Shown here piece after piece: positions 5,389 through 44,300 of a stretch of DNA of 64,000 nucleotides. This DNA is from Haliotis rubra (Eukaryota). How positions within the stretch are numbered: position 1 is the first letter of the stretch; every line of letters starts with the position of its first letter. Location: contig NW_025766026.1 of the NCBI RefSeq assembly GCF_003918875.1, positions 62,001 to 126,000 on the forward strand, read 5' to 3'. The notes below the pieces were generated by a model. That model was not told where the DNA came from and searched no databases. It saw only the letters and a program-made list of their open reading frames with translations. The position numbers and the translations under genes are program-made.

Positions 5389-5515
5389 GGCCCATAACAT
5401 TTTGAATGTACTGTCCCTAGACGAAATCTGTTTGCCAAGGGCTTACAGGCAGGTACTTCTCTCGAACATTTTATACAATAACATGTGGTTGATTAGTGTT
5501 TTACAACATCAGATC

Positions 5516-8500
5516 ATGGAACGAACTTTGACGAAGAAGGATCAGAAACAACTGAACAAATGGATGAACGGAATGAAAGCCTTTGAACTTCTGTACAAGG
5601 CTTCCCGTGATGGTTGTTCCAACACCGCCTTCCACCAGAAGTGTGACAACAAGGGGCCTACAGTCACAGTCTTCTATAACACGTCGGACTGCGTGTTTGG
5701 TGGCTACACCGCGGTCAGCTGGGACTCTGCTAATGCCTACAGGGTCGACCCGACAGCATTCCTGTTCCGTTTGTACTTCAAAGGTTCCAGCAGCCCTAAA
5801 AAATACCCAGCAATAAACGGCACCAATGCAATTTACGGACACGCGACCTATGGCCCTACTTTCGGGGGTGGTCCTGACGTTTACAGTTTCAACGGTACTG
5901 TGGCCTTGAGCGGTGCATCCTTCCCACTCAACGGTTCTTTGGCTCCTGGTGCAAGCTACGCCATGGCGGGAGACAATGCCACATCACTGGCCTGTTCCAG
6001 TCTCGTCTGCTACGACGTGGAAGTCTACAGTGTGAAAGGTGGGTTGGTCAGACACTCTGATGCCAAGAGTTATTGTCGACCAGTGAAGATCCGGGTTAGA
6101 ATACGTTTTCAGCAACTCATGCTTGTCGTCAGAGGTTGATAATGGGATCGGGTGGTCAGTTTCGCTTATGCATGCCATTGTATCTTAGTTACGTAGGTCA
6201 ATGCTCATGACGTCAATCAGTAGATTTCATGGTTCAGACTCCATTATTTGCAGACCGCATTCACATAGCTTTAACATGGCTGAGTGCAGCGTTTAACAAC
6301 AGAGTTATTGTCATAATACAATTTTATACGAGTGATGAGAATTGTGAATTGGTTAATAGTGTGTCATAAGACCCTGGCGTTGTTGATCATTACCCACAAT
6401 ATCAGTAACTGAATTTCTTGGTTCAGACTTGAGTAGGTCCTTCCCGCCGTCATATAGCTGGAATATTGCGGGGGCGAAACAACAAACACGTTAATAGTAA
6501 CTGATATGTTTTGTGTTTTATGAGATGCTTGAAACAAGAACCATAACTTTTGCAGATGGAAGCATTATCAACGACGACCCATGGAGACAACTGACAGAAT
6601 CTAAACCAAAGGTAGATCGCAGTTTTTAGTGACATACGATCACCTTAGTGCTTTGTGAAAGGAGACGCTGTGGTATTCACTTTCTAAGCTGACACTACAG
6701 AGGACCGTTAACACAAACATGATTCAGAGACAAGACATAAATATTGTCACTATTGTTAGGGCATCAGCCCACGTGTTCTGATGGGTGCCTTGAAACAGCC
6801 CCCTTTTTTCACAAATTATCCAGCTCCCATTCTTACATTTGTTAGCCTATCTCCCGGACTTCTTACCTCTATTTTAAAACCAAGACTCGCCCACTCCAGC
6901 CCCGTTTATTTTAGGAACTATATCGCATTTCTTGGACCTGTGAATAAAGTGAATCTAAAATCTGTGATGTGATTTGTTTTAATAATCTATTTTTAATGTT
7001 TCATGTTTTACTACCCCATTTCTAACTTCATCTGTACTCTTATTTACTAATCGTACTTCCCAGTATTATATATTCTTATCATGTATACTGTTTCTGCAAA
7101 AAAAATCCCTCTTCTCACAACTTCCAGTTAACCATTCCTCTTGTAGGTTGTTGTTTGTCTGGATTGTTGTTTAACGCCGCACTCAGCAATGTTCCAGCAA
7201 TATGGCGGCGGTTTGCAAATAATCGAATCTAGACCAGACAATCCAATGATCAACATCAGGAAAAGCGATCTACGGGATATAATCACATGTATAAACCAAG
7301 TCAGAGAGCCTGACCATCCGATCCTGATAGTCACCTCTTGCGACAAACATCGGTTACAGAAGATCATTTCTAAACGGGATCTTCTTGCGTCTTATTCGTT
7401 GTAAAACCTGGGATTAAATTTATACGTTATCTCCCTAATGGGTTTCAAAGTAAAATTAGGTATATAATTCGTGTTTTAAAGGTTAAGTGTACTAAATCGA
7501 AGACACGTTTTTGTTTTATCACCTATCTACAGCCAGATATTCTAACCAGACTAGGGGTAGCAAAATACATTTTAGCCTATAGTGAAAGATATATTTCAAA
7601 CGTCGTAGCGCTTATTTAAACACTAATTTAAAACAAATATTTAGTTGTTCTGACTGTGTATAAAACATAGGAAACATTACTACTTCGACCCTCGTGCATT
7701 TCAAAAGAAACCTTGGGGTCGTTTTTTGTTTGTTTGTTGTTGTTTTTTTGTCTATCATTACAAAATCCCGAAACCTGCAATTATATGCTTGTAAAACTTT
7801 TCCCCCTGTTTTATGACAGGTATAATTATATGGTTTTGGTTGTGGCATGCATGCCATTTTTAATAAGCTATTAAATATCTTACATCTACTGACATCAACG
7901 TTTGTGCTACAGGTTCTGAAATCTGAGATCGAAACATATTCCCCAATCGAGGGGGTGAAGGCAGGACGAGTCAACATTCTATTGGTCGGGGCGGTAGGAG
8001 CCGGTAAGTCCAGCTACTTCAACACCATGAACTCGATCTTCAGAGGTCACGTGACTAGTCAAGCCTGCAGCGGAAGTGCCGAACACAGTCTTACGACACA
8101 TGTGAGCCGTTTTGTAATATTTGTGTGTGAAAGGGTCTGTCTATATAAAGAATATTCTAAGTGCTGGAGAAGAAAGAAATCACAAAAAGAAAAGTTTCCG
8201 TAAACTTCTTCCCTCCTTTGAGCTATTTGAATTCATTTGATGATATGTTATATCAGAGGCTCTAATTCCATATCCCACGCATCTTCACGAGGCAAGGGAG
8301 GTAACTGTGAAAGTAACGTTTCCACGTTTGAGGAGGTAGGCGTTAATGGTGGAGTAATAGTTTTGCTGGACTAATAGTCTATGCATATTCCGATCAAAAT
8401 CGCGAAAACACCTAAAACAAAATTCTCCGTAACTGAAAATGGTAAAAAATGTGTCCCTGATGTCATTCAACTTCAACCTTCAGCATCGCTGGACAGTTGT

Positions 8501-11200
8501 CCTACTTATTAATCAGAACCATCATACTATGAATGCGTTCGATTGACAAATCTGAAATAATGAAAGTACTAGTAGAACTCTGTTAGATGTCATGTAAAAT
8601 GTAAATCATGTGTTCTTTTAAGATTGTTGTTGACATACTTTATTGATGATTCATAGATCTATGAGAAGCGGGACTATTATTAAACCCGTTGCTATATTTA
8701 TATATTTAAATTTTACTTTAAACACATTGCTAGATTTATATCTATTTATCCATTTCACATGAATGAGTATAACAATAACATTGTTTTCAATTAAGGTTTA
8801 TTAGCATATCTCGATAGATCCATGTTTGTGTTAAACACAGGAACCTAGTGTAATGGTACCAATGGCAAGAAACACTGACATTTATTTTCTCTTAGTATCG
8901 GAAGTACAAAGTCCGGTCCTCCGAGACGGGTAAACCACTCAAGTTCCGCCTGTGTGACACACGAGGCCTAGAGGAAGCCCAAGGAATGGACGCGACTGAC
9001 GTGGTTGCCATATTGGATGGACACCTTCCTGACAAGTATATGGTACTTCATGACGCTGTTTAGATCTCGTATCATCGATACAAACCAAAAATGATCATTA
9101 GTGACATGTCTGGTCAAATGCCTTTAAATAAGAATGTATTCCATGTTCGTCCAAATATGTATAACGTAACTCGTTTTAGTGAGAGATCCATGTTGATACG
9201 TGAATTGTACACAAAGAAAGTTTTGGAAGATCGTCCGCTTCAGCTATCGGTACTTCATGCAGATCCATACACGACAGTATGTTTTCGAAGAAAATGCAAC
9301 AGATCCTGTTGTAAGCACATGGTATAGGGTGTCACAGAATCATTTTGTATTAGTACTGTCTTTGATCAACAAATGTTTACTTCCGTGGTTATATCGGATC
9401 ATTCGTCACCACTCGCCCCTTTCCCTAATAGGTATTCGGCATGTCCCGGAGTAACACGAGTGGGTGACGAATGATTACCGATCACAGAAGGCACCCAGTG
9501 ACTCTTATCAAGCTTTGTGACTTGGCTGTTCACACCACACTGTATCCCGGCGCTTCTGATTCTGATGTTATTCGGTCCATAGTCGATTATGTACAGTCTA
9601 TGATGTCTCTGTAATATTGGGGTAAAGCGTCCGCTCGAAACACTGATTTCTGATGTCAACCCGACGTGAATATTGCTAAAGGCGGCGCAAAATCGTACGC
9701 ACTCAATCTTGGGTATTGCATATTGTGGTGTCTAACAGTATGCACGCAGAATGTAGTTGTTTCAAACCTAACTATTATGTTTCCAGTTTAACCCAGCTGT
9801 GTCAATTTCGCCTGACACCCCTGGATACAACAAGTCCCCTGTAACACAGGACAAGATACACTGTGTGGCATTCGTCATGGACGGCTGTTCCGTAGACGTG
9901 TTCCCAGACAAAATTCTGCAGAATATGAAAGCTATACAACAGAAAGCTAATCAGAGAGGTACACAAACTCAAACATTTTAGAACAAACAATCCAAATTAA
10001 CAACAACTTCAGCCAATGAAATTCCAAATTGTTTTGAAGCTGTTGGTTTTGAAACCTACTACCACGTTTGCTACGAGTGACGATCCGGGTTAAAGCTGAT
10101 CTTTAGTAACCTATACTTGTCGTAAGAAGCGACTGACAGGATCGGGTGGTCAGGCAAGCTGACTTGTTTGAAATATGTAATCGTATCCAAACTACGTACA
10201 TCGATGGTCATGATTTCGATCACTGGATTTTCTGGTTGAATCTTGATTATTTACAGGCCGTAAATAGCTGGAATATTGCTGAGCGCGACGTTGAACAACA
10301 AACAAACAAGCATTTTAGATATGTATAGTTGTATACAGTGCATAATCCAGGACCTGGTTAACAACTTTAGCCAATGAGATTTGAAATTCTTTTAAAGTTA
10401 TCCTTAGAATCTACACCCCTTTGCCAGGAGTATGATACATTGATGTATCCTGCTGTCTCACTCTAACATATAAATGGTAATATTTTCAACTGAGAGCAAC
10501 TGGGAAGTTTTACACCTGAATTGTAAGACCTGATTGAAGCGTTTACTCCTTAATTGTAAGACCCAGCTTTTACAGTTGTATTGTACACTATTCTTCTGTA
10601 AATATTAATTCAATGTAACTAAAAGTTACCGTGCTTTCAATTGAAAATTCTTAAACCGGAATCTACCCAGTAGCCTAAAATGTTATGTGTAATGTTTTAA
10701 ACCACTCGCCTGCTTTCATGGAATTCGTTTGATAACGCGACTGCCGCATTGTTTCAATATAAGATATGCTGTCTCATTTTATTTTATTTATTTTTACTTT
10801 GCTTAGAACGAGCAGAAGAATTTTCATCGCTTAGTCAAATCCAGTATTCATTTCTTTATCTTGGTTTCACTAAACTCAACAGGGAGGTAGAAATGAGTTT
10901 TGTTCTGAATCCTTTTCAGGTATACCACAAGTGGTCATCTTGACCAAGGTGGATAAGGCCTGTCCATATGTTGAAGAGGATCCGGGGACCCTGTTCTACA
11001 GCTCTGCAGTCAGTGAACTGGTGGAACAAGTGTCCCAACTCATTGGTCTGCCCCGTGCCCACGTTCTGCCCGTGAAGAACTACGAGAAGGAAATGGAGCT
11101 GGTGGATAACGTGGATGTCCCTGCTTTGATCAGCCTCCGTCAGATGCTGAGATTCGCTGATGACTATCTCTACAACTTCCTGGATGAGGAGGACGATTAG
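5516..11200 (+). CDS. IFI44L: IFI44/IFI44L-like protein, gene A (TLDc + P-loop GTPase-like domain), ~455 aa, 6 coding exons
   Basis: Exons 5516-6038, 6556-6611, 7913-8101, 8896-9042, 9787-9958, 10920-11200 are all GT-AG and phase-compatible, totalling 1368 nt. TLDc motifs LLYKASRDG, FHQKCDNKGPT, FGGYT, YGPTFGGG; linker DPWR; G1 GAVGAGKS; G3 LCDTRG; IHCVAFV; G4 LTKVD; VKNYEKE. Symbol is family-level, not an orthology claim. Confidence 0.92.
6080..6300 (+). mobile_element. SINE family 2 copy (gtgaagatccgggttagaa... head)
   Basis: Matches copies at 19199, 26689 and 59287. Confidence 0.8.
7160..7385 (-). mobile_element. SINE family 2 copy
   Basis: Reverse complement of the family 2 consensus, including the gctgagtgcggcgttaaac tail. 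Confidence 0.8.
10075..10310 (+). mobile_element. SINE family 2 copy
   Basis: gatcgggtggtcagg core and gctggaatattgctgag tail followed by (caaa)n. Confidence 0.8.
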
Positions 11201-17027: not shown

Positions 17028-20000
17028 CTACACAATGTCTTCTGGTCTTGAGCTCTGCACAGAATCATGCTGGCGATCTTGTATGAACCGTAGCATCTGC
17101 CTTAGACTGAACAGAGTAAGTCGGTCCACCTCCTTTTCTAGTTCAATCTCCTCAACATAGTTCTTCACCGGGAAGATGTGCGAGCGCGGTTGACCCATGA
17201 GCTCTGCTGCCTTGTCAACCAGATCTGCTATCTTAGAACTGTCGAACGTAAGAGACAGGTCTTTGTCCGCCAACGAGCAAACCAAGTCTATCTTTGATAG
17301 CACCACTGTTTGGGGAATATCTGCTCGAAAAGAAAATAAGCTTAACTACATCGACAAAATTTAGTTTTAAGAGAGAAGAACGAAGCTTTTAACTCAAAGG
17401 CTAACATTATGACTATAGTGCTTGTTGTATAACGCCTCACACATCAATATTCCCGGCATACTCCGCTTGTAAATAACGAGACACGGACCAGACTATCCAA
17501 TGATTGACTTGCTTATCAACAATCGACACAATGGATGACAATGCAACGGCAACAACGTTAACCTTATCAGGTGTACAACATTTTGAGTTAAGTCTAGTGC
17601 TGTTTATTAACGACGTAGGGTAAGTGCATAGTTAAACTTACTGCATTTGTTGGCTATGTCTTTCCACTTGTCAAACTCCCTTTTTATATCTCTCGGTAGG
17701 TCATCGATGACACTTCCATCAATAACAAACACAATACCATGCATGCTCTTCAAATCAGTCCTCTTCCTATAACTGTCAATGATACCGTGAATCCATAATG
17801 CAAGCTTCGTCTGAAAATAGACCAATCGACTGCATCCATACATATCATGTGGCAAACAATAACTGTGAGTCAATTTTAGCAGGATCACGGCGGGGGGCAT
17901 CAAACATGAAAACAGAGCCTATTTTATGCCCTGAAGAGCAAACACTTTAACTACTAGGTTATATCCTGCCACTACTGGATTGATTCATGTTGCCATACTG
18001 TGTTATTCTTTGAATATTCCAGGTTTTCAAGCATATCAATTCTAGATCAAAACATGTTTGATTTGATGCTTAACTGACCGTGATTGAATCTGCATCAGGC
18101 GTAGTGTCTTGGGGTGTTTCCAATCCTGGACTCTCACAAAATCTCAAACTGAGAACTGCCCTGTCTTGTCCTCTTTTGATCTCATGTTCCTTCCTCTAAA
18201 AGTGATTAAATTGACAACTTTAAAATTGAGAACTAAATGTGGTAAAACGTTAAAGGAAGCTACAGAATGTAATATGTTACAAACTATGTGTGCATGAAAG
18301 CATTGAAAGAAAGTTTTACATAAATATATGAAGTAAATTCATGCATATCATTTGTCCTCTTGCCTTGGAAGTACCACTTGCAACTTCAGTGCTGTGGGCA
18401 CTTGTGACATAACCCCTAAAGGCGGAGCGAATGCTGTGTATGTAGCTGGACTGGCCGGCATCTCGCTGACACACAAGCAAGATCTTCACGGGGTCAAGTG
18501 TTTGGGGCACGCTATAAGCTTCTATGTCTGCCTTCATGTTCTGAAAGTGAAATTGTGAAATAATATGAATATAGCCAATGGTATCTTTCTTAAAGGCACA
18601 GTGCCACATATGTTCGACAATATTTTGGCCCATATTATATATGTTGTGGCATATGCACTCACCTTAGCTTCCTATTGATGCAACAGAAGACTTATTATCC
18701 CTTATGACTTGCCTGAAATCGATAATTGAATCTTCGAGGCGTACAACTTCCAAACAGAGAACACTTGCCATATATGGAATGTAAAATATTACTCTGTATA
18801 TCGGAAACTGTCGCACATGGTGGTGTCGGTGTTTGCCGAACTGGCTTTCACGGGTTGCGCCCATGGCATTTATAAAGAGCGCTCCAAGGCACATAACTCT
18901 GTGGGGTTCGCTTGAAAAAACGTTCGGCCGGTAGAGGACCTGAGAGTCGATTTAATACAACGTTGTATTAATTCTTTCCAACTTTTTTTTTAATATTGTA
19001 ATCTAAAAACGTAATTTATTTTATATTTACGTTACGTTATTACATTATATTTATTTTCTCTGGGGGCTTCATTATGTAGTTTGAAAGAAGTGTGCTGTGC
19101 AATAACTAGTACCTTTAAGGAGAACACACTATAATGTATTCAATCAATATAGAGGACAATGCTTGAAAATGCGCTGTAATTGTGTTCTTCTTATTACTAC
19201 CCGTGAAGATCCGGCTAAGAATATTGATCTTCAGTAACCCATGCTTGTCGTAAGAGGCGACTAACGGGATCGGGTGGTCAGGCTCGGTGACTTGGTTGAC
19301 ACATTTCATCGGTTCCCAATTGCTCAGATCGGTGCTCATGCTGTTGATCACTGTATTGCCTGGTCCAGACTCGACTATTTACAGACCGCCGCCATGTAGC
19401 TGGAATATTGCTGAGTGTAGCGTAAAACTAAACTCACTTTTCTTATTACTTCAGTACTTACGTCATTTGTGTCCGTTATTTGTGTCCATGGGGAAGGCAG
19501 GTAATCTTTATCATCTGTCGGAAAGAAGAAAACATTAAATTCACCTCGAATGACATACTTCCTCTCCGTTTCAGCTTGCCTGACTGTTCGAAAATAATTA
19601 ATTGTTTCTCAAAACATACAATGACCAAAGTGTTTGCTGTTCTAATACATGCCATTAAATTCAACACGAGAGGTACACGGGGGTTAAAGAGCAAATACAT
19701 GTACCCAGCAGGACACAAACAGTCGAACACCATTGTCTCGAAGTTGAAGGGACCTACGCAATAAATTCCAGTTATCCGAGAGTCGACACAAACGTATAAG
19801 TGAGTGAGTGAGTTTAGCTTTACGCCGCACTCAGCAATATTCAAGCTATATGGCGGCGGTCTGTAAATAATTGAGTCTGGACCAGACAATCCAGTGATCA
19901 ACAGCATGAGCATCGATCTGCGAAATTGGGAACGGAAGACATGTGTCGACCAAGTCAGCGAGCCTGACCACCCGATCCCGTTAGTCGCCTTTTACGACAA

Positions 20001-22398
20001 GCATAGTCGCCTTTTGTGGCAAGCATGGTTGCTGAAGACCTATTCTACACCGGATCTTCACGGGTCAAAAACGTATAATGCTGACTATATCAGGAATATA
20101 TGGGAACCAAACTGTAACTTCGAGACAACCGTGAGTTCGACACAACGGTGTTTGTATACGCATTGAGAAGGACAAATGTATATTAGTTATGTACTGAACA
20201 GGGCAAATAAATGCATTCACAATAACTTGGAAAGGTATACCACGTGGCATTCCAGTAACTGCACAATAGTAAGTTTAGTTTAACGCCGCTCCCAGCAATA
20301 TTCAAGCTATATGGCGGCGGTCTGTAAACAATCGAGTCTGGACCAGACAATCTATTGGTCAACAGCACAAACAACTCGATGCAGTTCGTAACCTGGTTTT
20401 TACGTATCTCCTCAAACGAATCATTTGCACATATACCGCTGAGGGACAGACAATAAATGCAATGTATGTTCTCTTGGTGATTTGGCTGACTACATAACAC
20501 CGGTATTGATGTCCCTACACTGGCTACCAATATAAGCCCGGATCCACTTCAAGATCTTGTGCTTTGCCTACACTGTTTGAATGGTACAGCACCGAGCTAT
20601 CTATAAGAACTGATCTCTCCTTACCAGCCTTCATGACGTCTAAGGTCTGAAATCCAACGCCTACTTGCAGTACCAAACTCAAGACTAAACTCGTATTGCA
20701 ACAGCTCGTTTCAAGTAGCAGCACCCCAGTTATGGAACTCACTATCTCAGAACATGAAAAGAATCCCTCACCCTTGAGACATTTAAAACCAGCCTAAAAA
20801 CGTATCTCTTCAGAAAGTGCTATCCCCACGAACTATCTCCTCCTGTGAACTTCGCATCTGTGACTATTGTAGCGCCTTGAGCATGCACTTTTGTTGATGG
20901 AACCCAGCGCAACACAAACAGACATTCTTATTATTAGCTGTGGCTAATGTGTACAATACCCTCATACCAAGAACTTGGTAAACTTGAAATCCCGTTTGAG
21001 CCATATTGTTGGAAACCAGACGTTCATGTCTGTGGTGCCTCTGGCTGTTGTATGTCTGGCCCAGGTCAGTCAGGATCAGGAGCTTCATCACCACATCCCG
21101 CCTGTAAGGAGAGCGCCGCTCAAGTCTGGTTTCAACATCTCGTCTTGCTTTCTCATCGTTACCTCCGCCAAACGTTGGGCCGTAGAGAGGATGACAGTAG
21201 ATTGAACAGCTGTGATCATCAGTGTCATATTTTCTTGGATCGAAAGAACCTCGGTCGTACAATTTGAACACGAAAGCATCACGATCCGGTTTTGATCCTG
21301 AAGGTTTGGCATCCCAACTTGCAGAAGTATACCCCCCTAATGTAAAACCGAGAAGATTCAATCACTCATATTCTTCATGGCAATGAAATAGACATTTTGC
21401 TGTAATGCTCGTCAACTTAAGATGTAATACTATTTTATCACTAACATAAATATATCAGGGGGTATCATTAATACTTTATGACAACGTTACATGCGAAATT
21501 AGGAGACATGATGGTATACAAATGGAATGCCGCTGGTTTGTTTCAATTAAATGTACCAGTGATGGATTTATCTCTATTGTCTTTGATAAACTATTTAATC
21601 GCCATGCCTGTGAAAGTGTGTTTGTATGTACTCAACACAATTAAAAACGTGTATGAAATGAATGCCTGGTTTGACTAGGTGTTAGTTAAAAAATCCAGAA
21701 AACCCACAAAACTGGTAATATTTGTGATCTTCGAAGGGGGGTAATTTTTTGTAGTTTCTTGCCACAGACGGTAATGGCAATGACATGTAGGCAACTTGGA
21801 CGTGGGTCTGGCGGTAAACGTGAAATAGTTGGTCATATAGAGCGTGACAAAGCATTAAACACAACAGTTACACGATCATCTATAACAGGAAAACGCAAAA
21901 AGCAAGTATGCCGCAACTCTTGAATCAGCAACTTGCTCTGGGTGGGCGTTATGCTTGACAATCTCTTGCAGCAGTTTCACGTGACCTGGGCTGGAGTCGC
22001 CAGACAATAAAATTTTCACTGAGTTTTGATGCCATTTATAATTTAGAGCTGAATTTAGCGAGAATGCCGTCATTCAGTACTACGGATCGTTTGCAAACGA
22101 AGCGGTACATTGTTCTTTATTAGGTTAGTTATCGGGTTAGATAATTCCGTAAGGCTTCATGACAATATGCCGAAACCAAACGTGCTTGCGGAATATTTTT
22201 AAATGTAATATACTCACCAAACGAACTGTTGTCTGCAAAGAAGATGGATACAGTCGGTCCTTTTCTGTCGCAACATCTGTGAAAGTCATACGGGACGTTC
22301 TTTGAGGTTCCGCTTTCAAACAACAACTTGAATTTCTTCCTCCCCTCCAACCAATGCATTAACGTTTCCTCACACAGTTGATTGAACAGTTTTGTCAT
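17028..22398 (-). CDS. IFI44L: Divergent IFI44/IFI44L-like protein, gene B (~446 aa), degenerate GTPase motifs
   Basis: Exons 22398-22218, 21336-20968, candidate linker 19579-19545, 18540-18364 (GC donor), 18195-18079, 17810-17642, 17320-17028 join into an open frame. TLDc FHRCCDRKGPT/FGGYT/YGPTFGGG; G1 reads LLVCQRDAGQSS; G3 reads FCESPG; SKID and VKNY retained. The linker exon and the GC donor are the least certain parts. Confidence 0.8.
19199..19438 (+). mobile_element. SINE family 2, full-length copy
   Basis: acccgtgaagatccgg...ggaatattgctgagtgtagcgtaaaactaaactcac. Confidence 0.88.
19800..20066 (-). mobile_element. SINE family 2, full-length copy
   Basis: (gagt)n tail at left, ccggatcttcacgggt at right. 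Confidence 0.88.
20515..20890 (+). mobile_element. L2/CR1-group LINE 3' fragment
   Basis: Degenerate translation LHWLPI..RIHFKIL..NGTAPSYL..APQLWNSL..FKTSLKTYLF, typical of the L2 ORF2 C-terminus, then a gcgccttgagca tail. Confidence 0.75.
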
Positions 22399-29323: not shown

Positions 29324-32300
29324 CTACTGCAAATGCTGTAATAGAAAGTCGTCTGTGAACCTCAGCATCTGCCTGAGGCTGAGAAGAGTGAGTCGATCCA
29401 CATCGTCGTCCAGTTCACTCTCCTGCTCGTAGTTCTTCACAGGGAAGACGTGAGACCGAGGCAGCCTTAAGAGTGTTGCAGTTTGTTCCACCAAGTCCCG
29501 TATCTGGGTGCTGTGGAACGTCAGAGATAGATTACTGTCCACCATCCTGCACACCTTGTCGATCTTCGTCAACAGGACTGTCTGCGGAATACCTGAAACG
29601 CATATCGACGTACATAAATACACACACACACACACACGTAGACACACATGCAAACACGCACGCACTCGCGCACACACACAATGAGCTGTATGATCAATAC
29701 ACACGTCCATGTATAGTACTCCTTATACAAAGATAAGGGGCGGTGGGTAGCCTAGTGGTTAAAGCGTTCGCTCGTCACACCGAAGGCCTGTGTTCGGTTC
29801 CCCACATGGGTACAATGTGTGAAGTCCACTTCTGGTGCCCCTGCGGTGATGTTGCTGGAATATTGCTAAAAGCAGCGTGAAACTAAACTCACTCATTCAC
29901 TCATTTAAAATAAAATTCACGCACAACATAAAGTAAAATAATTTTCATTAAATCGACATTGCATATGTAGCACCTCATACGTTCGTAATATTCAGAGGAG
30001 TTCTTACCATATTCGTTGGCAGTTTTCTTTATTTTCTCAAACGCATCCTTCACCTCTAGCGGTAGACCATTGATCACTGAGCCATCAATGACGAAAGCAA
30101 CACAGTGAATCTTCCGCTGGAGCTCCTCCTCGTCCTGACGCCATGCCTGCTGACGTCCTAGATGTCTATTCCACAGGTTAGTCATCATCGTTGCCAGCAT
30201 AGCCTGTCCCGAAAAAATGTTCATCATATACTGGGTTTTTCACTCTTTAACTTCCCAACTCATCTGTTTACCGTTTTTTCGGGGAAAAAAAGTGTACATC
30301 AGGATTAAGAATAAAAAATGGATTCAGTTGAACATAAGTACCACTAAACAGGAAACAAATCCAGATTCCTGGGTGGAGGCACATGGCATATGTAACCTAT
30401 GTAAAATTTCACTGGAACACAGTTTAGTGTATAACTGGAGTCCCAGGAAGTGTCTGGCAAAAGATGTTTTTACAATAATAAAGCATACGTTTATTGTAGA
30501 TGGCGACGTTTCGTTTCTTACACCGTTTTCAAACTAAACGCGCTTGAAAGTTTGGCTTAAAACGGTGTGAGAATCTGCATCGAAACGTAGATTATCTATG
30601 CAATAAACAAACAGTTGTTATCCATAAAGTCGCATGCTTTATCATTGACTCACCAACTTCTAGAATGGCAATCAAACAATTAGTATGGTGACTTAATTGA
30701 TTTTAGACGCTTACTATGTAACTTTGCGGACTTCCTTGTATGATGTTTTGGATGTCCCGTACCATACTCTGGCCCATTGCTTGTTCAAATCCTCGTGTGT
30801 CCCACAATCGAAACTTGAGTAGCATCCCTTGAGGCCAGGTATAGATCCTGTGTTCTTCATTCTGGAGCAATAAAAGGAGGGATAGTCAAAGAAAGGCATT
30901 GCAATCAACCATGCCAGTAACCCTGACAAACAGTGATTCATTATGACAATGTTGCGTAAGCTGATAAATACGCAGAGGAACCGCAGCAGAGACTACACGT
31001 CTATAATAGCGAGAACGTTACCTATTACAGCTGAATTTCACTGACATAGATTTGAGAAATGTTTGGATCAAGATATTGCAAATGATACTCTGCAACTCGA
31101 TGGATCGAGGTCACACAAAGGTGAGTGACTGGATAGTTTGTTGCGCCACTTAAGTAATAGTCCAGCAATATCACTCACGTGGGACTCTAGAAATGGCTTC
31201 ACAGTTGCTGCCTATATTCAAACGCCAGTTAAAATTGTTCTTCAGTATCCCATGCTTATCGTAGGAGGCGACTAACGGGATCGGGTGGTCAGGCTCGCTG
31301 ACATGGTTGACATATGTCATCGTATCCCAATTGCGTTTGATCTATGCTCATGATGTCAATCACTTGATTTTCTTGACAAGATTAGATAATTTAAAGACTT
31401 CCGTCGTATAGCTGGGATATCAAAGGGGTTAGTTGGATCCTGGGTGAATGGATTACTTAGAGAATAACCAACGAGGTTCGAGTGATTACGGGAAATATGC
31501 CCGAGTTGAAATAATGTTCACAGTGCCGAGCCTTGGCGAGGCACTGAACATTATTTTAACGAGGGCATATTTCCCGTAATCACTCGGACCTCGTTGGTTA
31601 TTCTATTTTTTACCCATCATGTAATTTAAAAGGAAGAACCACGAAATAAAAACCACCCGGAGACAGGACTTCTGACCTTAAACAGCTGATTCGTATTCAT
31701 GCGCGTATTAAACATAACTACGCTATGGAAATAGTACATCATAAAATCGCTTTAACATACAACAAAATTATTATGCCTGGAATAATTAATTGACATTTGT
31801 TTATATGCTAAAATGATCTTTTAAATATATCATTGAACTTAATAAGAGCTAAACATTTATTTGATCAAGTCAGTGCGACGGAACATCGTTCATTCACGAC
31901 TGACGTGTTTTTTAGTGACGGGTGACGGTGTAGTGTTGAAACACACTCTGGCAAAAACCTGTCAATTTTTGGGAAAGTCAACGGTTAAAAGTTGGGAAAT
32001 CTAAAAGACAACCATCCAACGAATACATCTAGTTAAAGTTTTCTGTCAAGAAACTCAACAAGTTTGAAGATTAAACAACATTTTGCTCTGTGGAAGGCGT
32101 GTTACACTCTCGTCTTAGTAGAGTACAGCAGTTTCAAGAAGGATAACTCTAGTCGGAATCCGAGTCTATGAAATGTGTCCATCTCTGCATCGGCTACTGG
32201 GACCAACCTCTCAGATTGATTAGGAATGCATGTATATAAAAAGTCATCTTGAAGAAGAACATTTAGCACTGATTCCGGTAAGAAAGGAGCTGTTTTCTGG

Positions 32301-35300
32301 TTCGATGTCATGGACGCCGTGTCCGACTTACTTGTTACACTTTCAGATAACATCTTCAGTCGGTATCTTAAGCTTGCTGTTTCTATTTCCCCAAATTCAG
32401 TTTCAACAACAAACAGGTTTTGAGAATTCAAGGGCTGTAAAATTCTTATCACTCTTCCTATTTGGTCACCGTCAACTTTAACTAGGTAAGTGACCTTGAT
32501 CGGGGTTAGCCTAACGGCGGCCATGTTTGTTTACAAACAATGCAAACGATTGTTTGGTAGGTTTTTTAAAGATTATATAATTTAAAAAGACTACTATTTA
32601 TAACGCAGGTTTATTCCAAAATAATAACGTCTAATAAAAAGAATATTCATATTCTTTCACCTTAATGTTTTCTTTTTTAGATCTCGGAATGTGTGATTAC
32701 ATTACATAATGTCAATTTATCAATGAATCGATGAAACTTTATGAATGAACGTAGTGTGTGAAAGTAGTTCCGGCATCCAATGAAAATGTACAAATATACG
32801 ATCAACCAATCAACGTCGAGAATCACTAAATTGCACATGTGCAAATATCAAAAAGATATTACACGGGATCTCCTCACCCGTATGGGTAATAAATGCGAAT
32901 AATACAACTACATTGTATCGTCTGACTACTTGTATATATTATGATTTGTCCCTGCACCTTTTGTGTTAGACTGTGGAGTGCACTGCCGGTAGGCACAGAG
33001 CTTGTGACGTAACCCCTGAAGGCCGAGGTGATACTGTTGAGGTAGCTCGACTTTCCCGCTCCTATCTGACCAACTAGGAGTATATTTGTGAACGTCAAAC
33101 CACCAGGAGGCTTGAAACCTTCTAAGTCTCTTCGTAAAGACTGAAACATGAAACAGGGAAAAACACATCATATTGTATAATCATTATGACAGATCATACA
33201 ATATTATACACATGATGACATATGTGTTCTCTTAATTCATCTTCGTGGGATTTTTTATAGCCAAGAACTATATTGTTTTAATGTTTGTACACTCTAATGA
33301 GAAATCAATTGCACTAACTTTATTATTTTCTTAAACAGCATATAGAATCGTTTCGCCCTAGTTACAACGTTGATTCTTACAATTGCTAATGAAATATCAC
33401 GGTTTATGTACCTCAACCGCCACTTGAGTGACATTTCGCCATGCCTTTTCAACATATTCATTGTCATCTGAAATAAAAATGTATGGAAACTGTAACCCGT
33501 CTCAGTTTAACGTGGAGAGGTCAAACCGCGAATCAGCGAGATAACCGCGTCTTGTTGATGTCTGGCAATAACTTTGATTCCAGCTAATCAACATGCAAAG
33601 ATTTCGCAACGTTATGCTTTGGGCTCTTCGCAACGTTATAACAACCTTTCTTATAACTTGGTGTCACGATAGAGTTTTCCGTAAAACGTTTCCCTTTGAA
33701 GTTCCTTGTTCACTATTCAGCTACAGCTTCAGAAAACACAGCAAAGCAGCATGCAAACTGACGAATAAACATTGAAGTCGAATAAACATTGAAGTCAATT
33801 CTGCTTTGTTTCATATGTACTGTTCACAACTAAGAAACCCATTAAATTAAATACAACGTTAAGACAGCGTAAAATACCTCAGCATCAAATAATATTAACC
33901 TTGTGGCGACATAAAATGACCAGGCCACAACGTTGTGACAAAGTAATTCTGAGTCCACAAAATAACGTTGTGACCATTGGTCTTCGAATCGCTGTTTGGA
34001 CAATACTTTTTAAACATATAAAATCTAAACTTTTGCAATCGCATGTTGTTTTTATAAGTTATGATTAACATATACTTCAAAATTGACCGAGATCGGTGAA
34101 GAAATGAATTTCTAAGAACATTCTACCGGTACGCTTATATAAAATACACATATACTCATGCCAATAATGGTTGTCACCCCCTTCAATTTTTTTGTCATGA
34201 GTATATGTAATGAGTGTTGCCTTAGAATTTTCTCAAAAATTCATTTCTTCACCGATCTCTAATCAAATGAAATTAATGTTAATCATAACGCATAAAACGA
34301 TATACGATGCAAAAGTCTAGAATATATATTTTTAAATACTGTCCAAACAGTGATTCAGAAACTAATGATTTGTGACAACGTAAATTGTGTCATAATATTT
34401 CAGTGATACTATTGGATCGGCGGGGTATATACATACTTGGTTCAGGTTAACCGGTGTCTGGCAGAGTGATCAACGATGCATAAATCAAACCACCAAATCC
34501 TATTTATTTAAAGCGTTAAGTCCTGGGTGGTTTTCCGACCGGCAGTGATTGCGCGCATACAACAGAATATACGCTCGACTTTGATAAATCGCCATCACGG
34601 CTGGGAAATATAACGTACTCCAGCGAACAACTCCGATTACCTACCCAAAACAATAGCCGTGAAGGACAATAGCCGTGAGAGTAATGTGAAGTTTCGCTGA
34701 ATACAATGGATGAAACCAGCTCTTCTCAAAAACTGGTAGGTAATTGTAAGCAGACAAATATTTACTTGACAACGGTTAAACTTACCAATGACAAGAAATA
34801 CCTCGAACTTCACAACCTCCTCTTGACCGTCTGTGAAGTTTACACTTTGGCGTACTTCAGGGCTGTATGCTTGACCTATTGCTGTTCGCACTGTGACGCC
34901 CGCCTGGTGACCAGTGTCCGTCTGTGTGACAATATCCTTCGTTCCGTCGGCTTGACCACCTCCAAATGTTGGTCCATAGTCGCTGTGGCAATAGATAGCA
35001 CAACGATGGGCTTTAACAGGGTACTTCTTCGGGTTGAAAGTGGCCCTTTTGAACAGCTGGAACAGAAAAGCTCTTTTGTCGTGCTTGTATTCTTGGTTAG
35101 AAGAGGGCTGCCAGGTCTGTCGCGTATAGCCACCTGGAATATCAGACAAGAATCTGTCAACACATGATGATGCATTTAGCTGAAACTATAATCCATTGTG
35201 TTTTCATCATGTTGTGACTTGTGCCTTGTGTGAAATTTGTAATAACTTAAGAACGATTTAAGGTTCAATTCTCAACATGGGTACAAGGTGTGAAGCCCAT

Positions 35301-35749
35301 TTCTGGTGTCCCCAACCGTGTTATTGCTGGAATATTGCTAAAAGCGGCGTAAAATTATACTGACTCGCTCACTTGTATCTTGCTGAGAAAGTTCTTCAAA
35401 GGGTTTTTTAACGCGGGAACTCCTTGAAGTGACGTAATGAAAAAGGCGGCGTTCGAAGTATGTAGAGGATTTACATTAGTCATTGCGAGATCAGTCTGGG
35501 AATTTTTACTAGTTAGCTCAGTTCGAGTTTATGGTGTGAAACGTACTCTATTAATATAGCCGTACCGAAAACACTGTCGCCATTGGTGTAGAAGACAGTA
35601 ACAGTGGGTTCACTTTTGTCACAGCGCTTATGAAACTCTTCGATCTGATTGTGGTACTGGGAACTGTCAAACAGGATCTTGAACTTATGGCTCTCCCCAA
35701 GCCACTCCTTCAGCATTTCCTGGCACAGGGGGTTGAATGACATCGACAT
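29324..35749 (-). CDS. IFI44L: IFI44/IFI44L-like protein, gene C (~460 aa), 7 coding exons
   Basis: Exons 35749-35566, 35133-34786, 33467-33412, 33140-32958, 30861-30715, 30203-30008, 29592-29324 are GT-AG and phase-compatible (1383 nt). G1 GQIGAGKS, G3 LWDTRG, IHCVAFVIDG, G4 LTKID, VKNYEQE. Confidence 0.9.
29737..29903 (+). mobile_element. tRNA-derived SINE family 1 copy
   Basis: ggggcggtgggtagcctagtggttaaagcg...actaaactcactcattcac. Confidence 0.88.
31455..32870. mobile_element. Non-autonomous element with ~150 bp terminal hairpin (Crypton-like, tentative)
   Basis: Near-perfect palindrome 31459-31607 (gaataaccaacgagg...cctcgttggttattc) around gccgagccttggcgaggc; internal degenerate ORF 32102-32524. 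Family assignment and right boundary are inferences. Confidence 0.5.
33960..34390. mobile_element. MITE with long (~170 bp) inverted arms
   Basis: gagatcggtgaagaaatgaattt pairs with aaattcatttcttcaccgatctc; ttatgattaacat pairs with atgttaatcataa. Confidence 0.75.
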
Positions 35750-41300: not shown

Positions 41301-44300
41301 TCAGTTATCATTTTGATCGACATGATAATACAGATAATCATCTGCCAGACGCAGAATCTGTTGGAGACTCAGCAGAGCTGGAACATCCACGCGTACATCA
41401 AGTTCTGTTTCCTTCTCATAGTTCTTGATTGGCAGAACACAGCTCCGCGGGATACCAAACATCTGGGCAACCGTGTCAACGAGATCAGACACGGTGATGG
41501 TTTTGAAGAGACCCGACAAGTCTTTGTCCAGAACAGGACAGACCTTGTCCACCTTGGTCAGCAGAACAACCTGAGGCACACCTGCACGAAGTACAGAAAA
41601 GAGGGTGTTATGCAAATTGCTGACACTTCAGGAATGAGTGAATGTGTTTGGTTTAACGCGTCTTCTAATACTGTTTCAGCTACACCACGGTATGCCAGCT
41701 TCATGTAGGATGAAAATCAGGAGGTCCTGGACGTTTACCGCTTAAGTGAACACCACAAGTACGGAGGTCTTGGACGTTTACCGCTTAAGTGAACACCACG
41801 AGTACGGATATCTTGGACGTTTACCGCTTAAGTGAACACCACGAGTACGGAGATCTTGGACGTTTACCGCTTAAGTGAACACCACGAGTACGGCGGTCTT
41901 GGACGTTTGCTGCTTAAGTGAACAGCACGAAGTACGGAGGTTTCTTGACGTGTACGAGTGCGGAGGTCTGGTGTACCGCAAAAGTGAACACCACGATTAC
42001 CTAGTGCGTGGACGTTTACCGCTTAAATGAACATCAAGAGTACGGAGAGCTTGGACGTTTTACGCTCAAGTGAACACCACGAGTACAGAGTGCTTAGACG
42101 TTTACTGCTTAAATGAACACCACGAGTACGGAGGTCTTGGACGTTTACCGCTTAAGTGAAAACCACGAGTACGAAGGTCTTGGACGTTTGCTGCTTAAGT
42201 GAACATCACGAGTACGGAGTGCTTGGACGTTTACCACTCAAATGAACATCAAGAGTACGGAGGTCTTGGACGTTTGCCGCTTAAGTGAAAACCACGAGTA
42301 CGGAGTGCTTGGACGTTTGCTGCTTAAATGAACACCACGAGTACGGAGGTCTTGGACGTTTGCTGCTTAAGTGAAAACCACGAGTACGGAGGTCTTGGAC
42401 GTGTACTGCTTAAGTGAAAACCACGAGTACGGAGAGCTTGGACGTTTGCCGTTAAAATGCCAGGATTTTTATCGGGGACAACCAGGATTCGAAAACAAAT
42501 ATTTGGTTTCTGTCGTGCCTAGTGGGACGTAATTCTGCAGATCTGCTGCGTCTTACACGACTAACTCATCGATTACCCTGACTCCCTATTCAAACCAGTC
42601 AAAGTGGCACAGTGGCACATGTCCATCCCGAACGTACCGATCTCCTTATACAGAAATAATACATACCAGCATGTCATATTTCAGATCATTTTAACATTTC
42701 TTTCACACAAAGTGCGAAATGTGTGAAATAAGACATCATTATGAACATCTAAAATGTGTGAAATAAACATCATTATGAACATCTAAATGTGTCAATCAAT
42801 AATAGCGAAAGTCCAGAACAGTGTCACAAGAGAAGGTACATATCGTTCTGACAATAATATGATTCACTTAACAGCTTGCTATTATATTCCAATTCCTGCC
42901 TTGATTCTACCAATAGCGTGCGTCACACGTCAGATCAAGTAAACTAACGCTGGCGGCGGAGGGTAGCTGAATGGATAACCACGCTCAGAAGGCGTGACTT
43001 GCATCTAATTCTTTAGTCGCGTTCCATACTGATGATGAAGCATATCTGTGGTTTCTTAGATTTGTTCGAATAACCCTTTCACAAAGCAGCTAAAAGCATC
43101 TGAGACTGTGATGACAACTTGGGTATGCTACCCCGATTGACGATCATGAGAAGATTTTTTTTAATACTTTTTTGAGGGAACACTGCCATCTTGATATTTT
43201 TTGCAACACTGCTACAACACACATTTTACGCATACATTATTTTACAATGGTTATCTGGTCTACAATACCTCGAGCATTTGCAGATTCCTGAAACTCTTTC
43301 ACAACCTCTAGGATCTTGTCCGAAAATACGTCCACAGTAGAGGCGTCAACGACGAACACAACACAGTGAGCTGTGTCTTCAAAAGATGGAGATTTCCTGT
43401 AGCCTCTTGTCTCTGGACCCAACTTGGTTAATGGGTTAAACTGAATACAAAAATTATACTTGCACCTAGTGCAGCAATCAAGCTCCTAATGGTAAAGTGA
43501 TTGCAGCTCGGGTTGATAATATGTTCTTGCGGTAAAGGGTCCGATGAAGATTCAGATAAAGAAGAACAATACCTCTATGGATAGCCCTAGTCCTGACTAG
43601 TATCGCCAACAATCGCCTGCATCCAGTGGGGTGGATGTAAATCATACAGAGGTACAGTGCATGTAACAGATGTACAGTAAATCCCCTATCCTCCGCGTAT
43701 AGTTTGTTCTCATAACGTTCACAATGGTTTCAGGTACAAATCCGTGACATGTTACCAGAGATATTTCTATGGAAGCGTAGTAGTGCCACAAACAAAAGAA
43801 GAGCATCTGCGTAGATGATACTTGAATCTATTCTTTTATATTACAACGCTGATAGTTGGACAATTTGAAATGATTTCACTTAGGTGCAAAAGTATCCCAA
43901 AAGGACAAATAGAAATCAACAATCAACATGTTGCCAAATATAATAATACTATATATGTTTGTACTATATGCTTCAAGGGTCTCAACTTCCCAATGAAATT
44001 ATCATCTGTGTTGATCTCTTGTACACAGATGAAAGTACCTGCTACGTGAATGAAAGTATTTTCGATGTAAATGTAATTATACGTATCGTCTACGTATATG
44101 GAAGTATCTTCTACATAGAGCTAAATATCATCAAAGTAGATATTTCTTTAGACTCTGGCAATAGCTTTATAAATTACTGTTCCTTTGCGCCAGGTTAATA
44201 AAGTGCAGCATGTTCTAGTCAAAATGTGGCTGAAATGATGCTGAAGTGACCCCAAACGTCAACTCACTCACTCAGTTACACAAAGCGTACTAATACACAA

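What the first reader, a model, noticed from the sequence alone, without database searches (positions are those of the whole stretch)
17028..22398. Gene B: intact-frame IFI44-like paralog with a dismantled nucleotide-binding site (candidate pseudo-GTPase or decoy)
Seen: A, C and D have G1 GxxGxGKS and G3 DTRG, whereas B has CQRDAGQS (first Gly and catalytic Lys lost) and ESPG (Asp to Glu), and its G3 exon is 10 codons shorter than in A and C. Its exons still splice in frame without stops, and the TLDc motifs, SKID and VKNY are kept. Established: the Walker A Lys and the G3 Asp are needed for NTP/Mg binding in P-loop GTPases. Inference: B is a maintained dead paralog that could act as a dominant-negative regulator, scaffold or pathogen decoy beside active siblings, giving an active/inactive paired module in an invertebrate IFI44 locus.
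Basis: partly seen in the sequence, partly recalled or inferred. Interest (0 to 1): 0.8.

Follow-up and report, generated by a model that had tools for sequence, protein, structure and literature searches.

The report
Conserved abalone IFI44-like pseudo-GTPase paralog
Gene B is a real, spliced and expressed abalone immune-family gene whose GTP-binding switch lost its key residues before the sampled abalone species split, yet the rest of the protein has been kept by selection, so it is a conserved "dead-switch" paralog rather than a decaying pseudogene.

Summary
The window is Haliotis rubra. Gene B (minus strand, CDS 22398-17028) translates exactly to RefSeq XP_046567341.1. Its G1 is CQRDAGQS and its G3 is CESPG. 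Siblings A, C and D have GxxGxGKS and DTRG. B's G3 exon is 117 nt, against 147 nt in A and C.

B is not a young pseudogene:
- Syntenic orthologs with intact frames exist in H. asinina, H. cracherodii and H. rufescens. All four carry K->Q in G1 and DT->ES in G3.
- Whole-gene dN/dS among B orthologs is 0.27-0.42, the same range as the canonical sibling C.
- Contigs of two runs (X1, X2) skip two B introns exactly at the annotated junctions, including a GC-AG intron conserved in four species, and other contigs stop at the edges of exons 1 and 2. The degenerate motifs are in them.
- Within the G domain, the switch I-G3-switch II block evolves near neutrally (omega 0.66-0.79). The rest is as constrained as in C (0.15-0.28).
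- AlphaFold2 folds both domains.

So "maintained catalytically degenerate paralog" is supported. The dominant-negative, decoy and paired-module ideas are untested, and the unconstrained switch surfaces argue against pairing through the G interface.

I favour a switch-less scaffold or adaptor that works through the TLDc domain and the non-switch G-domain surfaces. This is a new variant of a known kind (pseudoGTPase) and of moderate interest.

The parts
22218..22398 (-). B coding exon 1 (start ATG 22398-22396), first part of the TLDc domain. The exon probably begins at 22419, after an AG acceptor, with a 5'UTR exon further upstream.
   Evidence: Exact translation match to P0151. Contigs of X1 and X2 stop exactly at the 22218/22217 donor. 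The X2 contig departs from the genome at 22421, while the DNA contig of X5 runs on.
20968..21336 (-). B exon 2, the rest of the TLDc domain (GGYTSASW ... GPTFGGG ... FQVYQVL).
   Evidence: An X2 contig covers 20968-21335 exactly, with unplaced flanks on both sides. Pfam TLD E = 1e-11.
19462..19514 (-). B exon 3, a 53-nt linker exon with the family's conserved PW motif.
   Evidence: A homologous 53-59 nt exon is present in the three other species.
18793..18939 (-). A 147-nt in-frame exon included in both H. rubra RefSeq isoforms only. It lies in a roughly 800-bp repeat-rich insertion into an intron that is 116-141 nt in the other species. Whether it is included in the mRNA is unresolved.
   Evidence: DNA-run depth here is hundreds of times the flanks. 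The AF2 model has pLDDT below 50 over residues 199-245.
18364..18540 (-). B G1 exon. The degenerate P-loop CQRDAGQS is at 18471-18448. The exon ends at a GC donor (GCAAGA).
   Evidence: A GC donor at this junction is present in all four species (GCAAGA in H. rubra and H. asinina, GCAGGT in H. cracherodii and H. rufescens). X2 contig 9 joins 18364 to 18195.
18079..18195 (-). B G3 exon (117 nt). CESPG at 18138-18124 replaces the family's DTRG.
17642..17810 (-). B exon with the remnant of switch II and strand beta-4 (GIVFVIDGS).
   Evidence: X1 contig 1 and X2 contig 8 join 17642 to 17320.
17028..17320 (-). B last coding exon: G4 SKID (17297-17286), PVKNY (VKNY at 17168-17157), a B-specific C-terminal tail and the stop codon at 17030-17028. 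The 3'UTR runs to at least 16800.
   Evidence: X1 and X2 contigs cover 16800-17320.
29324..35749 (-). Gene C, the canonical sister paralog of B (GQIGAGKS at 33071-33048, WDTRG at 30804-30790). It has the same 7-exon structure.
   Evidence: Tree.
5483..11200 (+). Gene A, a canonical paralog of the other subfamily (GAVGAGKS at 7988-8011, CDTRG at 8953-8967). The start and the small PW exon were not refined.
41301..48784 (-). Gene D, a canonical paralog (GAVGSGKS at 46153-46130, CDTRG at 44391-44377). The small PW exon was not refined.

Best explanation
Shown:
- B is a genuine, expressed protein-coding gene of Haliotis rubra (RefSeq LOC124275738).
- It arose by tandem duplication of a C-type IFI44-like gene (TLDc plus septin-like G domain) before the four sampled Haliotis species diverged.
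- On the stem of the B lineage, several residues invariant in the rest of the family were replaced: the P-loop lysine (K->Q), the following Asn (N->H), a switch I Gly, and the G3 Asp-Thr (DT->ES). Switch II was also shortened.
- Since then the TLDc domain and the non-switch parts of the G domain have stayed under purifying selection as strong as in the canonical sister C. The switch I-G3-switch II block drifts almost neutrally.

Inferred:
- B no longer cycles as a GTP-driven switch, so it is a pseudoGTPase.
- It acts as a constitutive, nucleotide-independent scaffold or adaptor. The working surfaces would be its TLDc domain, the conserved alpha-1/beta-4-to-C-terminal part of the G domain and a B-specific C-terminal tail.
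- In other proteins the TLDc fold docks on V-ATPase.
- This would preserve the nucleotide-independent part of IFI44 function, which is also seen when the G1 motif of human IFI44 is deleted.
For: - Exact gene model with a full open frame.
- Orthologs P0001 (H. asinina), P0152 (H. cracherodii) and P0221 (H. rufescens) sit in conserved synteny next to the C ortholog. They have the same exon structure and the same GC-AG intron.
- All four B proteins carry Q for the P-loop Lys and ES for DT.
- Among 124 family members of at least 300 aa, only this clade lacks GK[ST].
- The only columns that are 100% conserved in 46 other members and changed in all four B proteins are K280, N285, G302 and D330. All lie in G1, switch I or G3. 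G4 K414/D416 and PVKNY are kept.
- Whole-gene dN/dS is 0.27-0.33 by NG86 and 0.29-0.42 by YN00 and ML for the deep B pairs, against 0.26-0.57 for C.
- The switch block has omega 0.66-0.79 with confidence limits spanning 1. The rest of the G domain has 0.15-0.28, matching C at 0.13-0.31.
- The segment AGQSSYIHS.RSAFRGYVTS is identical in all four B proteins apart from one I/V position.
- In the tree, the B clade is sister to the C clade, both at 100/100. The B stem is 0.75 and the C stem 0.45.
- X1 and X2 contigs skip the introns 17320|17642 and 18195|18364 exactly and stop at the edges of exons 1 and 2. The X5 and X6 genomic contigs run through the introns. At least seven samples of one study hold the last exon and 3'UTR.
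- The AF2 model has mean pLDDT 79 with both domains folded. Foldseek matches TLDc structures (NCOA7, OXR2, Skywalker, and mEAK7 bound to V-ATPase) and GTPase folds (EngB, IRGs, mitofusin).
- Pfam MMR_HSR1 passes its threshold in C and A-like proteins but not in B.
- Human IFI44 with G1 deleted still restricts RSV (Busse et al. 2020).
Against: - No biochemical data exist. K->Q, D->E and T->S are conservative and invariant, and G4, the PVKNY motif that I take as the likely G5 equivalent, and the P-loop G-x-S are kept. Nucleotide binding could therefore persist.
- C's own switch block is also fast-evolving (omega 0.37-0.67), so the contrast with B is one of degree. With 73 codons the confidence limits are wide.
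- Among the 20 coding differences listed between the window and the reads of organism A, 14 are nonsynonymous and 6 synonymous. Recent relaxation in this lineage cannot be excluded.
- V-ATPase binding is extrapolated from other TLDc proteins only.
- Only four species, in two deep lineages, were available.
- The runs are labelled RNA only as a guess. Their RNA nature is inferred from the exact intron skipping.
Confidence: 0.55

Rival explanations
1. One reading: B regulates its canonical siblings (A, C, D) by hetero-oligomerising with them. The model is the GMS subfamily of mouse IRG proteins, which have an atypical P-loop and hold the GKS effectors inactive, or septin pseudoGTPases inside hetero-oligomers.
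For: - GQS in place of GKS parallels GMS in Irgm1-3 (Hunn et al. 2008).
- By profile, the family's G domain is closest to septins, GIMAP and Toc34, which dimerise across the nucleotide site.
- B has stayed next to C in H. asinina, H. rufescens and this window.
- Septin pseudoGTPases arose repeatedly.
Against: - The switch I, G3 and switch II surfaces that form the G interface in those families are the least constrained part of B (omega 0.66-0.79, with indels between species).
- GMS proteins keep DxxG and their interaction depends on nucleotide. B has also changed G3.
- Adjacency is expected for any tandem duplicate.
- No interaction data exist.
Confidence: 0.2
2. B still binds a guanine nucleotide, or another ligand, in a retuned pocket. 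It would be a permanently loaded, non-hydrolysing or slow G protein rather than an empty one.
For: - The replacements are chemically conservative and strictly fixed in four species (Q, E, S, H).
- G4 [ST]KID, PVKNY, the P-loop Gly279/Ser281/Ser282 and the G3 Gly333 are invariant.
- The P-loop and alpha-1 segment is among the most conserved in B (identity 0.96).
Against: - The P-loop Lys is 100% conserved in the other 46 aligned members. From general knowledge of P-loop NTPases, it is needed for beta/gamma-phosphate binding.
- The first and fourth P-loop glycines vary among B orthologs (C/G/S and D/G).
- Switch I and switch II are poorly conserved.
- GTPase HMMs no longer reach threshold.
Confidence: 0.17
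3. B is a pathogen decoy: a non-functional mimic of the active paralogs that soaks up a viral or bacterial antagonist.
For: - It belongs to an expanded immune-type gene family and lies beside canonical copies.
- The switch block evolves fast, and there are many nonsynonymous differences between close haplotypes or species.
Against: - No antagonist of mollusc IFI44-like proteins is known to me.
- B differs from its siblings exactly at surfaces a mimic should keep. It is only about 40-45% identical to C and has its own conserved C-terminal tail.
- No test for positive selection at sites was possible with four sequences.
Confidence: 0.04
4. B is a transcribed gene on its way to becoming a pseudogene, and the open frame is kept by chance.
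For: - Catalytic motifs are lost.
- A repeat inserted into an intron is partly annotated as an exon in H. rubra.
- One RefSeq isoform uses a non-canonical donor.
- The listed differences against organism A are 14 nonsynonymous to 6 synonymous.
Against: - The frame is open in four species separated by dS up to about 0.8.
- Whole-gene omega is 0.27-0.42, with bootstrap limits below 0.45 in the deep comparisons. Outside the switch block it is 0.15-0.28.
- The only coding indel listed in the reads is 3 nt long.
- Splice sites are conserved, including the GC donor.
Confidence: 0.04

Closest known systems
IFI44 / IFI44L family (vertebrate interferon-induced protein 44 and the mollusc 'IFI44-like' expansions)
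   Same: - The architecture is the same: an N-terminal TLDc domain plus a C-terminal septin-like G domain.
- Homology runs the full length.
- RefSeq names the orthologs 'interferon-induced protein 44-like'.
- In human IFI44 the G1 motif is dispensable for anti-RSV activity and G4 is incomplete.
   Different: - B and its three orthologs are the only members among the 124 inspected that lack the P-loop Lys and the G3 Asp.
- Switch II is shortened.
- B has its own conserved C-terminal tail.
- Induction by virus or interferon-like signals was not tested.
GMS subfamily of immunity-related GTPases (Irgm1-3), which regulate the GKS IRGs (Hunn et al. 2008, PMC2532785)
   Same: - It is a paralog within an immune GTPase family in which the P-loop Lys is replaced (GMS there, GQS here).
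- It coexists with canonical GKS siblings.
- The B model finds IRG structures among its best GTPase fold matches.
   Different: - It is a different family: there is no IIGP Pfam match and there is a TLDc domain.
- GMS proteins keep G3 and act in a nucleotide-dependent way. B has also changed G3 and has unconstrained switch regions.
- No regulatory interaction is shown.
PseudoGTPases in general (for example septin pseudoGTPases, PMC10731463; p190RhoGAP and AAGAB domains)
   Same: The GTPase fold is predicted to be kept, catalytic or nucleotide-binding motifs have degenerated, and the protein is conserved and expressed.
   Different: To my knowledge and in the paper searches, no pseudoGTPase has been described in the IFI44 family or in molluscs. 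The nucleotide-binding class of B (empty or loaded) is unknown.
TLDc proteins that bind V-ATPase (mEAK7, NCOA7, OXR1, TBC1D24/Skywalker)
   Same: B's N-terminal domain matches these structures by fold and by profile. It is under purifying selection (omega 0.21-0.32 in the deep comparisons).
   Different: V-ATPase binding has not been shown for any IFI44-like protein here. Those proteins do not have this G domain.

Membership tests
IFI44/IFI44L-like family | N-terminal TLDc domain (Pfam PF07534) | tested here: met
   P0151 scores 45.4 bits against a cut-off of 24.5, E = 1e-11. Fold matches to NCOA7, OXR2 and mEAK7 TLDc structures.
IFI44/IFI44L-like family | Full-length homology of the C-terminal G domain to annotated IFI44-like proteins | tested here: met
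   phmmer and hmmer hits to mollusc and fish IFI44-like proteins. B is placed inside the family as sister to C with 100/100 support.
IFI44/IFI44L-like family | Canonical G1 GxxxxGK[ST] | tested here: not met
   CQRDAGQS in the window. K->Q in all four orthologs.
IFI44/IFI44L-like family | G3 DxxG | tested here: not met
   ESPG or ESQG in all four orthologs.
IFI44/IFI44L-like family | G4 [NT]KxD | tested here: met
   SKID in H. rubra and TKID in the other three. K414 and D416 are invariant.
IFI44/IFI44L-like family | Induction by virus, poly(I:C) or interferon-like signalling | not tested
   Only presence in RNA-type contigs was seen. One ISRE-like match lies about 4.1 kb upstream, at 26535-26546, and is weak evidence.
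pseudoGTPase (pseudoenzyme) | GTPase fold retained | tested here: met
   Prediction only. The AF2 G-domain core has pLDDT around 90. Foldseek matches EngB, IRG and mitofusin with probability 1.00.
pseudoGTPase (pseudoenzyme) | Loss of residues required for nucleotide or Mg binding or for hydrolysis | tested here: met
   K280Q, D330E, T331S and G302E/K, against 96-100% conservation in 46 relatives.
pseudoGTPase (pseudoenzyme) | Maintained and expressed, so not a pseudogene | tested here: met
   Omega of 0.27-0.42 with open frames in four species. Intron-skipping contigs.
pseudoGTPase (pseudoenzyme) | Measured absence of GTP hydrolysis, and measured binding class | not testable with these tools
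   Needs purified protein.
IRG GMS-type regulators | IRG (IIGP, PF05049) G domain with a GxxxxGMS P-loop | tested here: not met
   No IIGP match for B. The P-loop ends in GQS. B is an analogue, not a member.
IRG GMS-type regulators | Direct, nucleotide-dependent control of canonical siblings | not testable with these tools
   No interaction assay was possible. Near-neutral switch regions argue against it.
unprocessed pseudogene | Frame disruptions, omega near 1, no spliced transcript | tested here: not met
   Intact frame in four species. Omega well below 1. Spliced contigs. Only the 73-codon switch block has omega near 0.7-0.8.

The most novel reading that the evidence does not exclude
B is the regulatory half of an invertebrate counterpart of the mouse GMS/GKS IRG system. 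In this reading a P-loop-Lys-less IFI44-like paralog controls, or is guarded by, its canonical neighbour C. Alternatively, its conservatively remodelled pocket (Q/H/E/S) has been retuned to hold a nucleotide permanently or to bind a different ligand. Either way, immune G proteins with altered switches would have arisen independently in molluscs and mammals.
Probability: 0.2. Interest if true: 0.7.

Novelty: new variant of a known kind. Interest (0 to 1): 0.4.

Why it matters
IFI44 and IFI44L are widely used interferon-signature genes whose mechanism is still unclear, and it is debated whether their G domain needs GTP. Here, over the whole depth of the sampled abalone radiation, the phosphate- and Mg-binding residues were replaced and the switch regions left to drift. 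The TLDc domain and the rest of the G domain stayed under selection throughout.

This is independent evolutionary support for a nucleotide-independent function of the family. It agrees with the human IFI44 G1-deletion result. It also points to the surfaces that carry that function: the TLDc domain, alpha-1, and beta-4 through the C-terminal helices.

In addition, B and its canonical sister C form a matched natural pair for biochemical comparison in a farmed mollusc that suffers herpesvirus disease.

Tried and rejected
- Pfam on single exon ORFs gave almost nothing. Full-length proteins were needed.
- H. rubra proteins P0157, P0158, P0087 and P0154 do not translate exactly from this window. They are other paralogs or haplotigs. 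I therefore modelled A, C and D by homology. The small PW exon of A and D was not recovered, so their models are wrong at that junction. The motif coordinates are unaffected.
- P0050 and P0156 gave no exact model.
- RefSeq isoform X1 of B (P0222) fits only with a non-canonical ATATGC donor. I treat it as doubtful.
- I could not settle whether the 147-nt exon 18939-18793 is spliced in.
- The joint table was swamped by repeat-derived joints from the DNA runs. Splicing evidence therefore comes from the contig pieces in its table 8.
- The young-pseudogene reading was considered and rejected.
- An assembly-error origin for the odd motifs was rejected, because X2 contigs carry them.
- Paper searches found no description of IFI44-like pseudoGTPases or of abalone IFI44 paralogs.
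- The earlier-findings look-up by words gave nothing relevant.
- I did not run a second structure prediction for C, branch-site codon models or a heterodimer prediction. The last two are not available here.

Full report
**What is in the window.** A tblastn of B's exon peptides and of database relatives finds four IFI44-like genes. They are A (+ strand, about 5483-11200), B (- strand, 22398-17028), C (- strand, 35749-29324) and D (- strand, 48784-41301). A phmmer search with B's last exon against 1.8 billion representatives returned 383 relatives. The best was P0001, at 88% identity. P0001 is 'interferon-induced protein 44-like' of Haliotis asinina. A second search found P0151, H. rubra 'uncharacterized protein LOC124275738 isoform X2'. 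An exon chain on the minus strand of the window translates into P0151 without a single mismatch. The window is therefore H. rubra, and B is that RefSeq gene.

**Gene model of B.** The coding exons are:
- 22398-22218
- 21336-20968
- 19514-19462
- 18939-18793
- 18540-18364
- 18195-18079
- 17810-17642
- 17320-17028

All acceptors are AG. All donors are GT except the donor after the G1 exon, which is GC (GCAAGA).

The fourth exon (147 nt, in frame) is present only in the H. rubra RefSeq models. It lies in a repeat-rich insertion of about 800 bp, in an intron that is 116-141 nt long in the other three species. Genomic read depth there is hundreds of times that of the flanks. The AF2 model gives it pLDDT below 50. 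Skipping it keeps the frame. I could not decide whether it is included in the mRNA.

**Check of the observation.**
- A has GAVGAGKS and CDTRG. C has GQIGAGKS and WDTRG. D has GAVGSGKS and CDTRG. B has CQRDAGQS (18471-18448) and CESPG (18138-18124).
- The G3 exon is 147 nt in A and C, 144 nt in D and 117 nt in B.
- SKID, VKNY and the TLDc domain are kept.
- One qualification: the 10-codon shortening is shared only with H. asinina. The H. cracherodii and H. rufescens orthologs have 144 nt there.

**Orthologs.**
- The H. asinina locus L001 carries, in the same order and orientation as the window, a C ortholog (P0155), the B ortholog (P0001) and an A-like gene.
- H. rufescens (L003) has C (P0153) followed by B (P0221).
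- H. cracherodii (L002) has B (P0152).
- All B orthologs have open frames, the same exon plan and the same GC donor.
- In the alignment all four have Gln for the P-loop Lys (GQQGAGQS, SRRDAGQS, CQRDAGQS) and Glu-Ser for the G3 Asp-Thr (CESPG or CESQG).
- The tree puts the four B proteins in a clade with 100/100 support, sister to the C clade (100/100). The duplication and the motif changes therefore predate the split of these species. The B stem (0.75) is longer than the C stem (0.45).

**How unusual this is in the family.** I examined 74 alignment columns that are at least 85% conserved in 46 non-B members. The columns that are 100% conserved there and changed in all four B proteins are K280Q, N285H, G302E/K and D330E, with T331S beside it. 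All lie in G1, the helix behind it, switch I or G3. G4 K414/D416, PVKNY and the P-loop G279/S281/S282 are kept. Pfam's MMR_HSR1 model passes its threshold in C and A-like proteins but not in B.

**Selection.**

| Region | B ortholog pairs | C ortholog pairs |
|---|---|---|
| Whole gene, NG86 (deep pairs) | 0.27-0.33, bootstrap limits below 0.45 | 0.26-0.47 |
| Whole gene, YN00 and ML (deep pairs) | 0.29-0.42 | up to 0.57 |
| Switch I-G3-switch II block (73 codons) | 0.66-0.79, limits span 1 | 0.37-0.67 |
| Rest of the G domain | 0.15-0.28 | 0.13-0.31 |

- The closest B pair (H. cracherodii against H. rufescens, dS 0.06) gives 0.43, with limits of 0.25-0.86.
- Window-wise identity tells the same story as the table. 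The segment behind the P-loop is 0.96 identical among B proteins. Switch I is 0.56 in B against 0.91 in C, and switch II is 0.26-0.40 against 0.50-0.62.
- The TLDc domain of B has omega 0.21-0.32 in the deep comparisons.
- B as a whole is therefore maintained, but the switch apparatus is not.

**Expression and splicing.** Runs X1-X4 of one study hold about a fifth of the sampled words of the 5.7-kb gene, roughly its exon share. Contigs laid on window:16800-22620 show the following.
- X1 record 1 and X2 record 8 join 17320 to 17642.
- X2 record 9 joins 18195 to 18364, which is the GC-AG intron.
- X2 record 10 covers exon 2 exactly.
- X1 record 7 and X2 record 13 stop at the exon 1 donor.
- The X2 contig leaves the genome at 22421, next to an AG acceptor. 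This suggests a 5'UTR exon further upstream.
- X5 and X6 contigs run through the 17320-17642 intron, so they are genomic DNA.
- The runs are labelled RNA only as a guess. Exact intron skipping shows that they contain spliced RNA.
- Weak contigs in intron 1 (depth 3-6, against 15-44 on exons) indicate some unspliced RNA or DNA carry-over.
- At least seven samples of that study hold the last exon and 3'UTR.
- The contigs differ from the window by 2-5%, so they come from a divergent haplotype or a very close relative.
- Of the 20 coding differences listed, 14 are nonsynonymous and 6 synonymous. None is a stop, and the one coding indel listed is 3 nt. This small sample cannot exclude recent relaxation, and I record it as a caveat.
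- The P-loop and G3 codons are covered by X2 record 9, which has one other letter in each piece. The only difference listed inside them, at 18421, is synonymous.

**Structure.** AF2 on a 50-sequence alignment gives mean pLDDT 79. The TLDc domain and the G-domain core are confident. Switch I (residues 299-305), part of switch II and the extra-exon residues score low. Foldseek finds TLDc structures (NCOA7, OXR2, Skywalker, and mEAK7 bound to V-ATPase) for the N-terminal half. For the C-terminal half it finds EngB, IRG proteins, mitofusin and MnmE. A profile of the family against PDB sequences finds mEAK7 and Skywalker TLDc, and then septins, GIMAP and Toc34. No IFI44 structure has been solved.

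**Mechanism.** The following is shown:
- B is a conserved, expressed paralog.
- Its phosphate- and Mg-binding residues are replaced.
- Its switch regions are unconstrained.
- Its other parts are constrained.

From this I infer that B no longer works as a GTP switch and acts as a constitutive scaffold or adaptor. The working surfaces would be the TLDc domain, the non-switch surfaces of the G domain and the B-specific C-terminal tail.

Two outside facts fit this reading:
- Human IFI44 with G1 deleted still restricts RSV, and human IFI44 lacks a complete G4 (Busse et al. 2020).
- TLDc domains of other proteins dock on V-ATPase (structures).

In those systems the interaction runs through the nucleotide-dependent G interface, and in B the corresponding surfaces drift. 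A retuned, still-binding pocket is a serious alternative, because the replacements are conservative, invariant among species, and accompanied by an intact G4. The decoy and decaying-pseudogene readings have little support.

**Novelty.** The gene is annotated in RefSeq, as 'uncharacterized' in H. rubra and 'IFI44-like' in the other species. I found no paper that describes a pseudoGTPase branch of the IFI44 family or abalone IFI44 paralogs. PseudoGTPase paralogs are a known phenomenon. I rate this as a new variant of a known kind, of moderate interest.

Noticed in passing
window 22607-24984: A minisatellite of 43 copies of a 55-bp unit lies directly upstream of B's first coding exon. It has a strong negative GC skew on the + strand (-0.39 and -0.32 in the 2-kb windows 22001-24000 and 24001-26000). 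It probably sits in B's 5' intron or promoter region.
   Followed up: partly
window 18541-19461 (extra exon at 18793-18939): The intron between the PW exon and the G1 exon is 116-141 nt in H. asinina, H. cracherodii and H. rufescens but 921 nt in H. rubra, because of a repeat insertion. Both RefSeq isoforms take 147 nt of the insertion as an in-frame exon (49 aa, AF2 pLDDT below 50). This is either exonisation or an annotation artefact.
   Followed up: partly
window 19198-19438, 19807-20004, 26687-26917, 56389-56592 and at least 9 other places: A SINE-like element of about 240 bp occurs in at least 13 copies in the window (71-91% identity). Two copies lie inside B's introns. Depth in the genomic runs shows it is extremely abundant.
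   Followed up: partly
window 5516-6061 (A) and 48784-48242 (D), against B 22398-20968 and C 35749-34786: A and D encode the whole TLDc domain in one exon. B and C share an intron inside it. The four genes therefore belong to two old subfamilies (A/D type and B/C type), which agrees with the tree.
   Followed up: yes
window 18349-18363: RefSeq isoform X1 of B (P0222) extends the G1 exon by 15 nt to a non-canonical ATATGC donor. The X2 contig supports the GC donor at 18364 instead.
   Followed up: partly
window 26535-26546 (-), 52118-52129 (-), 61504-61515 (-): There are three exact matches to the ISRE-like pattern GAAANNGAAAST, against 0.52 expected (2 of 100 shuffles reach 3). One lies about 4.1 kb upstream of B's ATG, beyond the minisatellite. 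One lies about 3.3 kb upstream of D.
   Followed up: partly
window 30203-30861 (C), alignment columns 345-390: The canonical sister C has also lost the family's conserved block after G3 (consensus LDGHxPDxYxFNP in A/D-type and bivalve members). Its switch block has omega 0.37-0.67. Remodelling of switch II therefore began before the B/C duplication.
   Followed up: partly
window 17028-22398, against reads of organism A: The listed coding differences between the reference allele and the X1, X2, X5 and X6 contigs are 14 nonsynonymous, 6 synonymous and one in-frame 3-nt deletion. Several nonsynonymous ones restore the residue seen in the other species (for example Q448L).
   Followed up: partly
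window 52227-52399: A run of 173 N (assembly gap or masked). I left it untouched.
   Followed up: no
L002 1-2050 (H. cracherodii): The gene called upstream of the B ortholog has a 929-residue product with two TLD hits. It is probably two tandem IFI44-like genes fused by the annotation.
   Followed up: no
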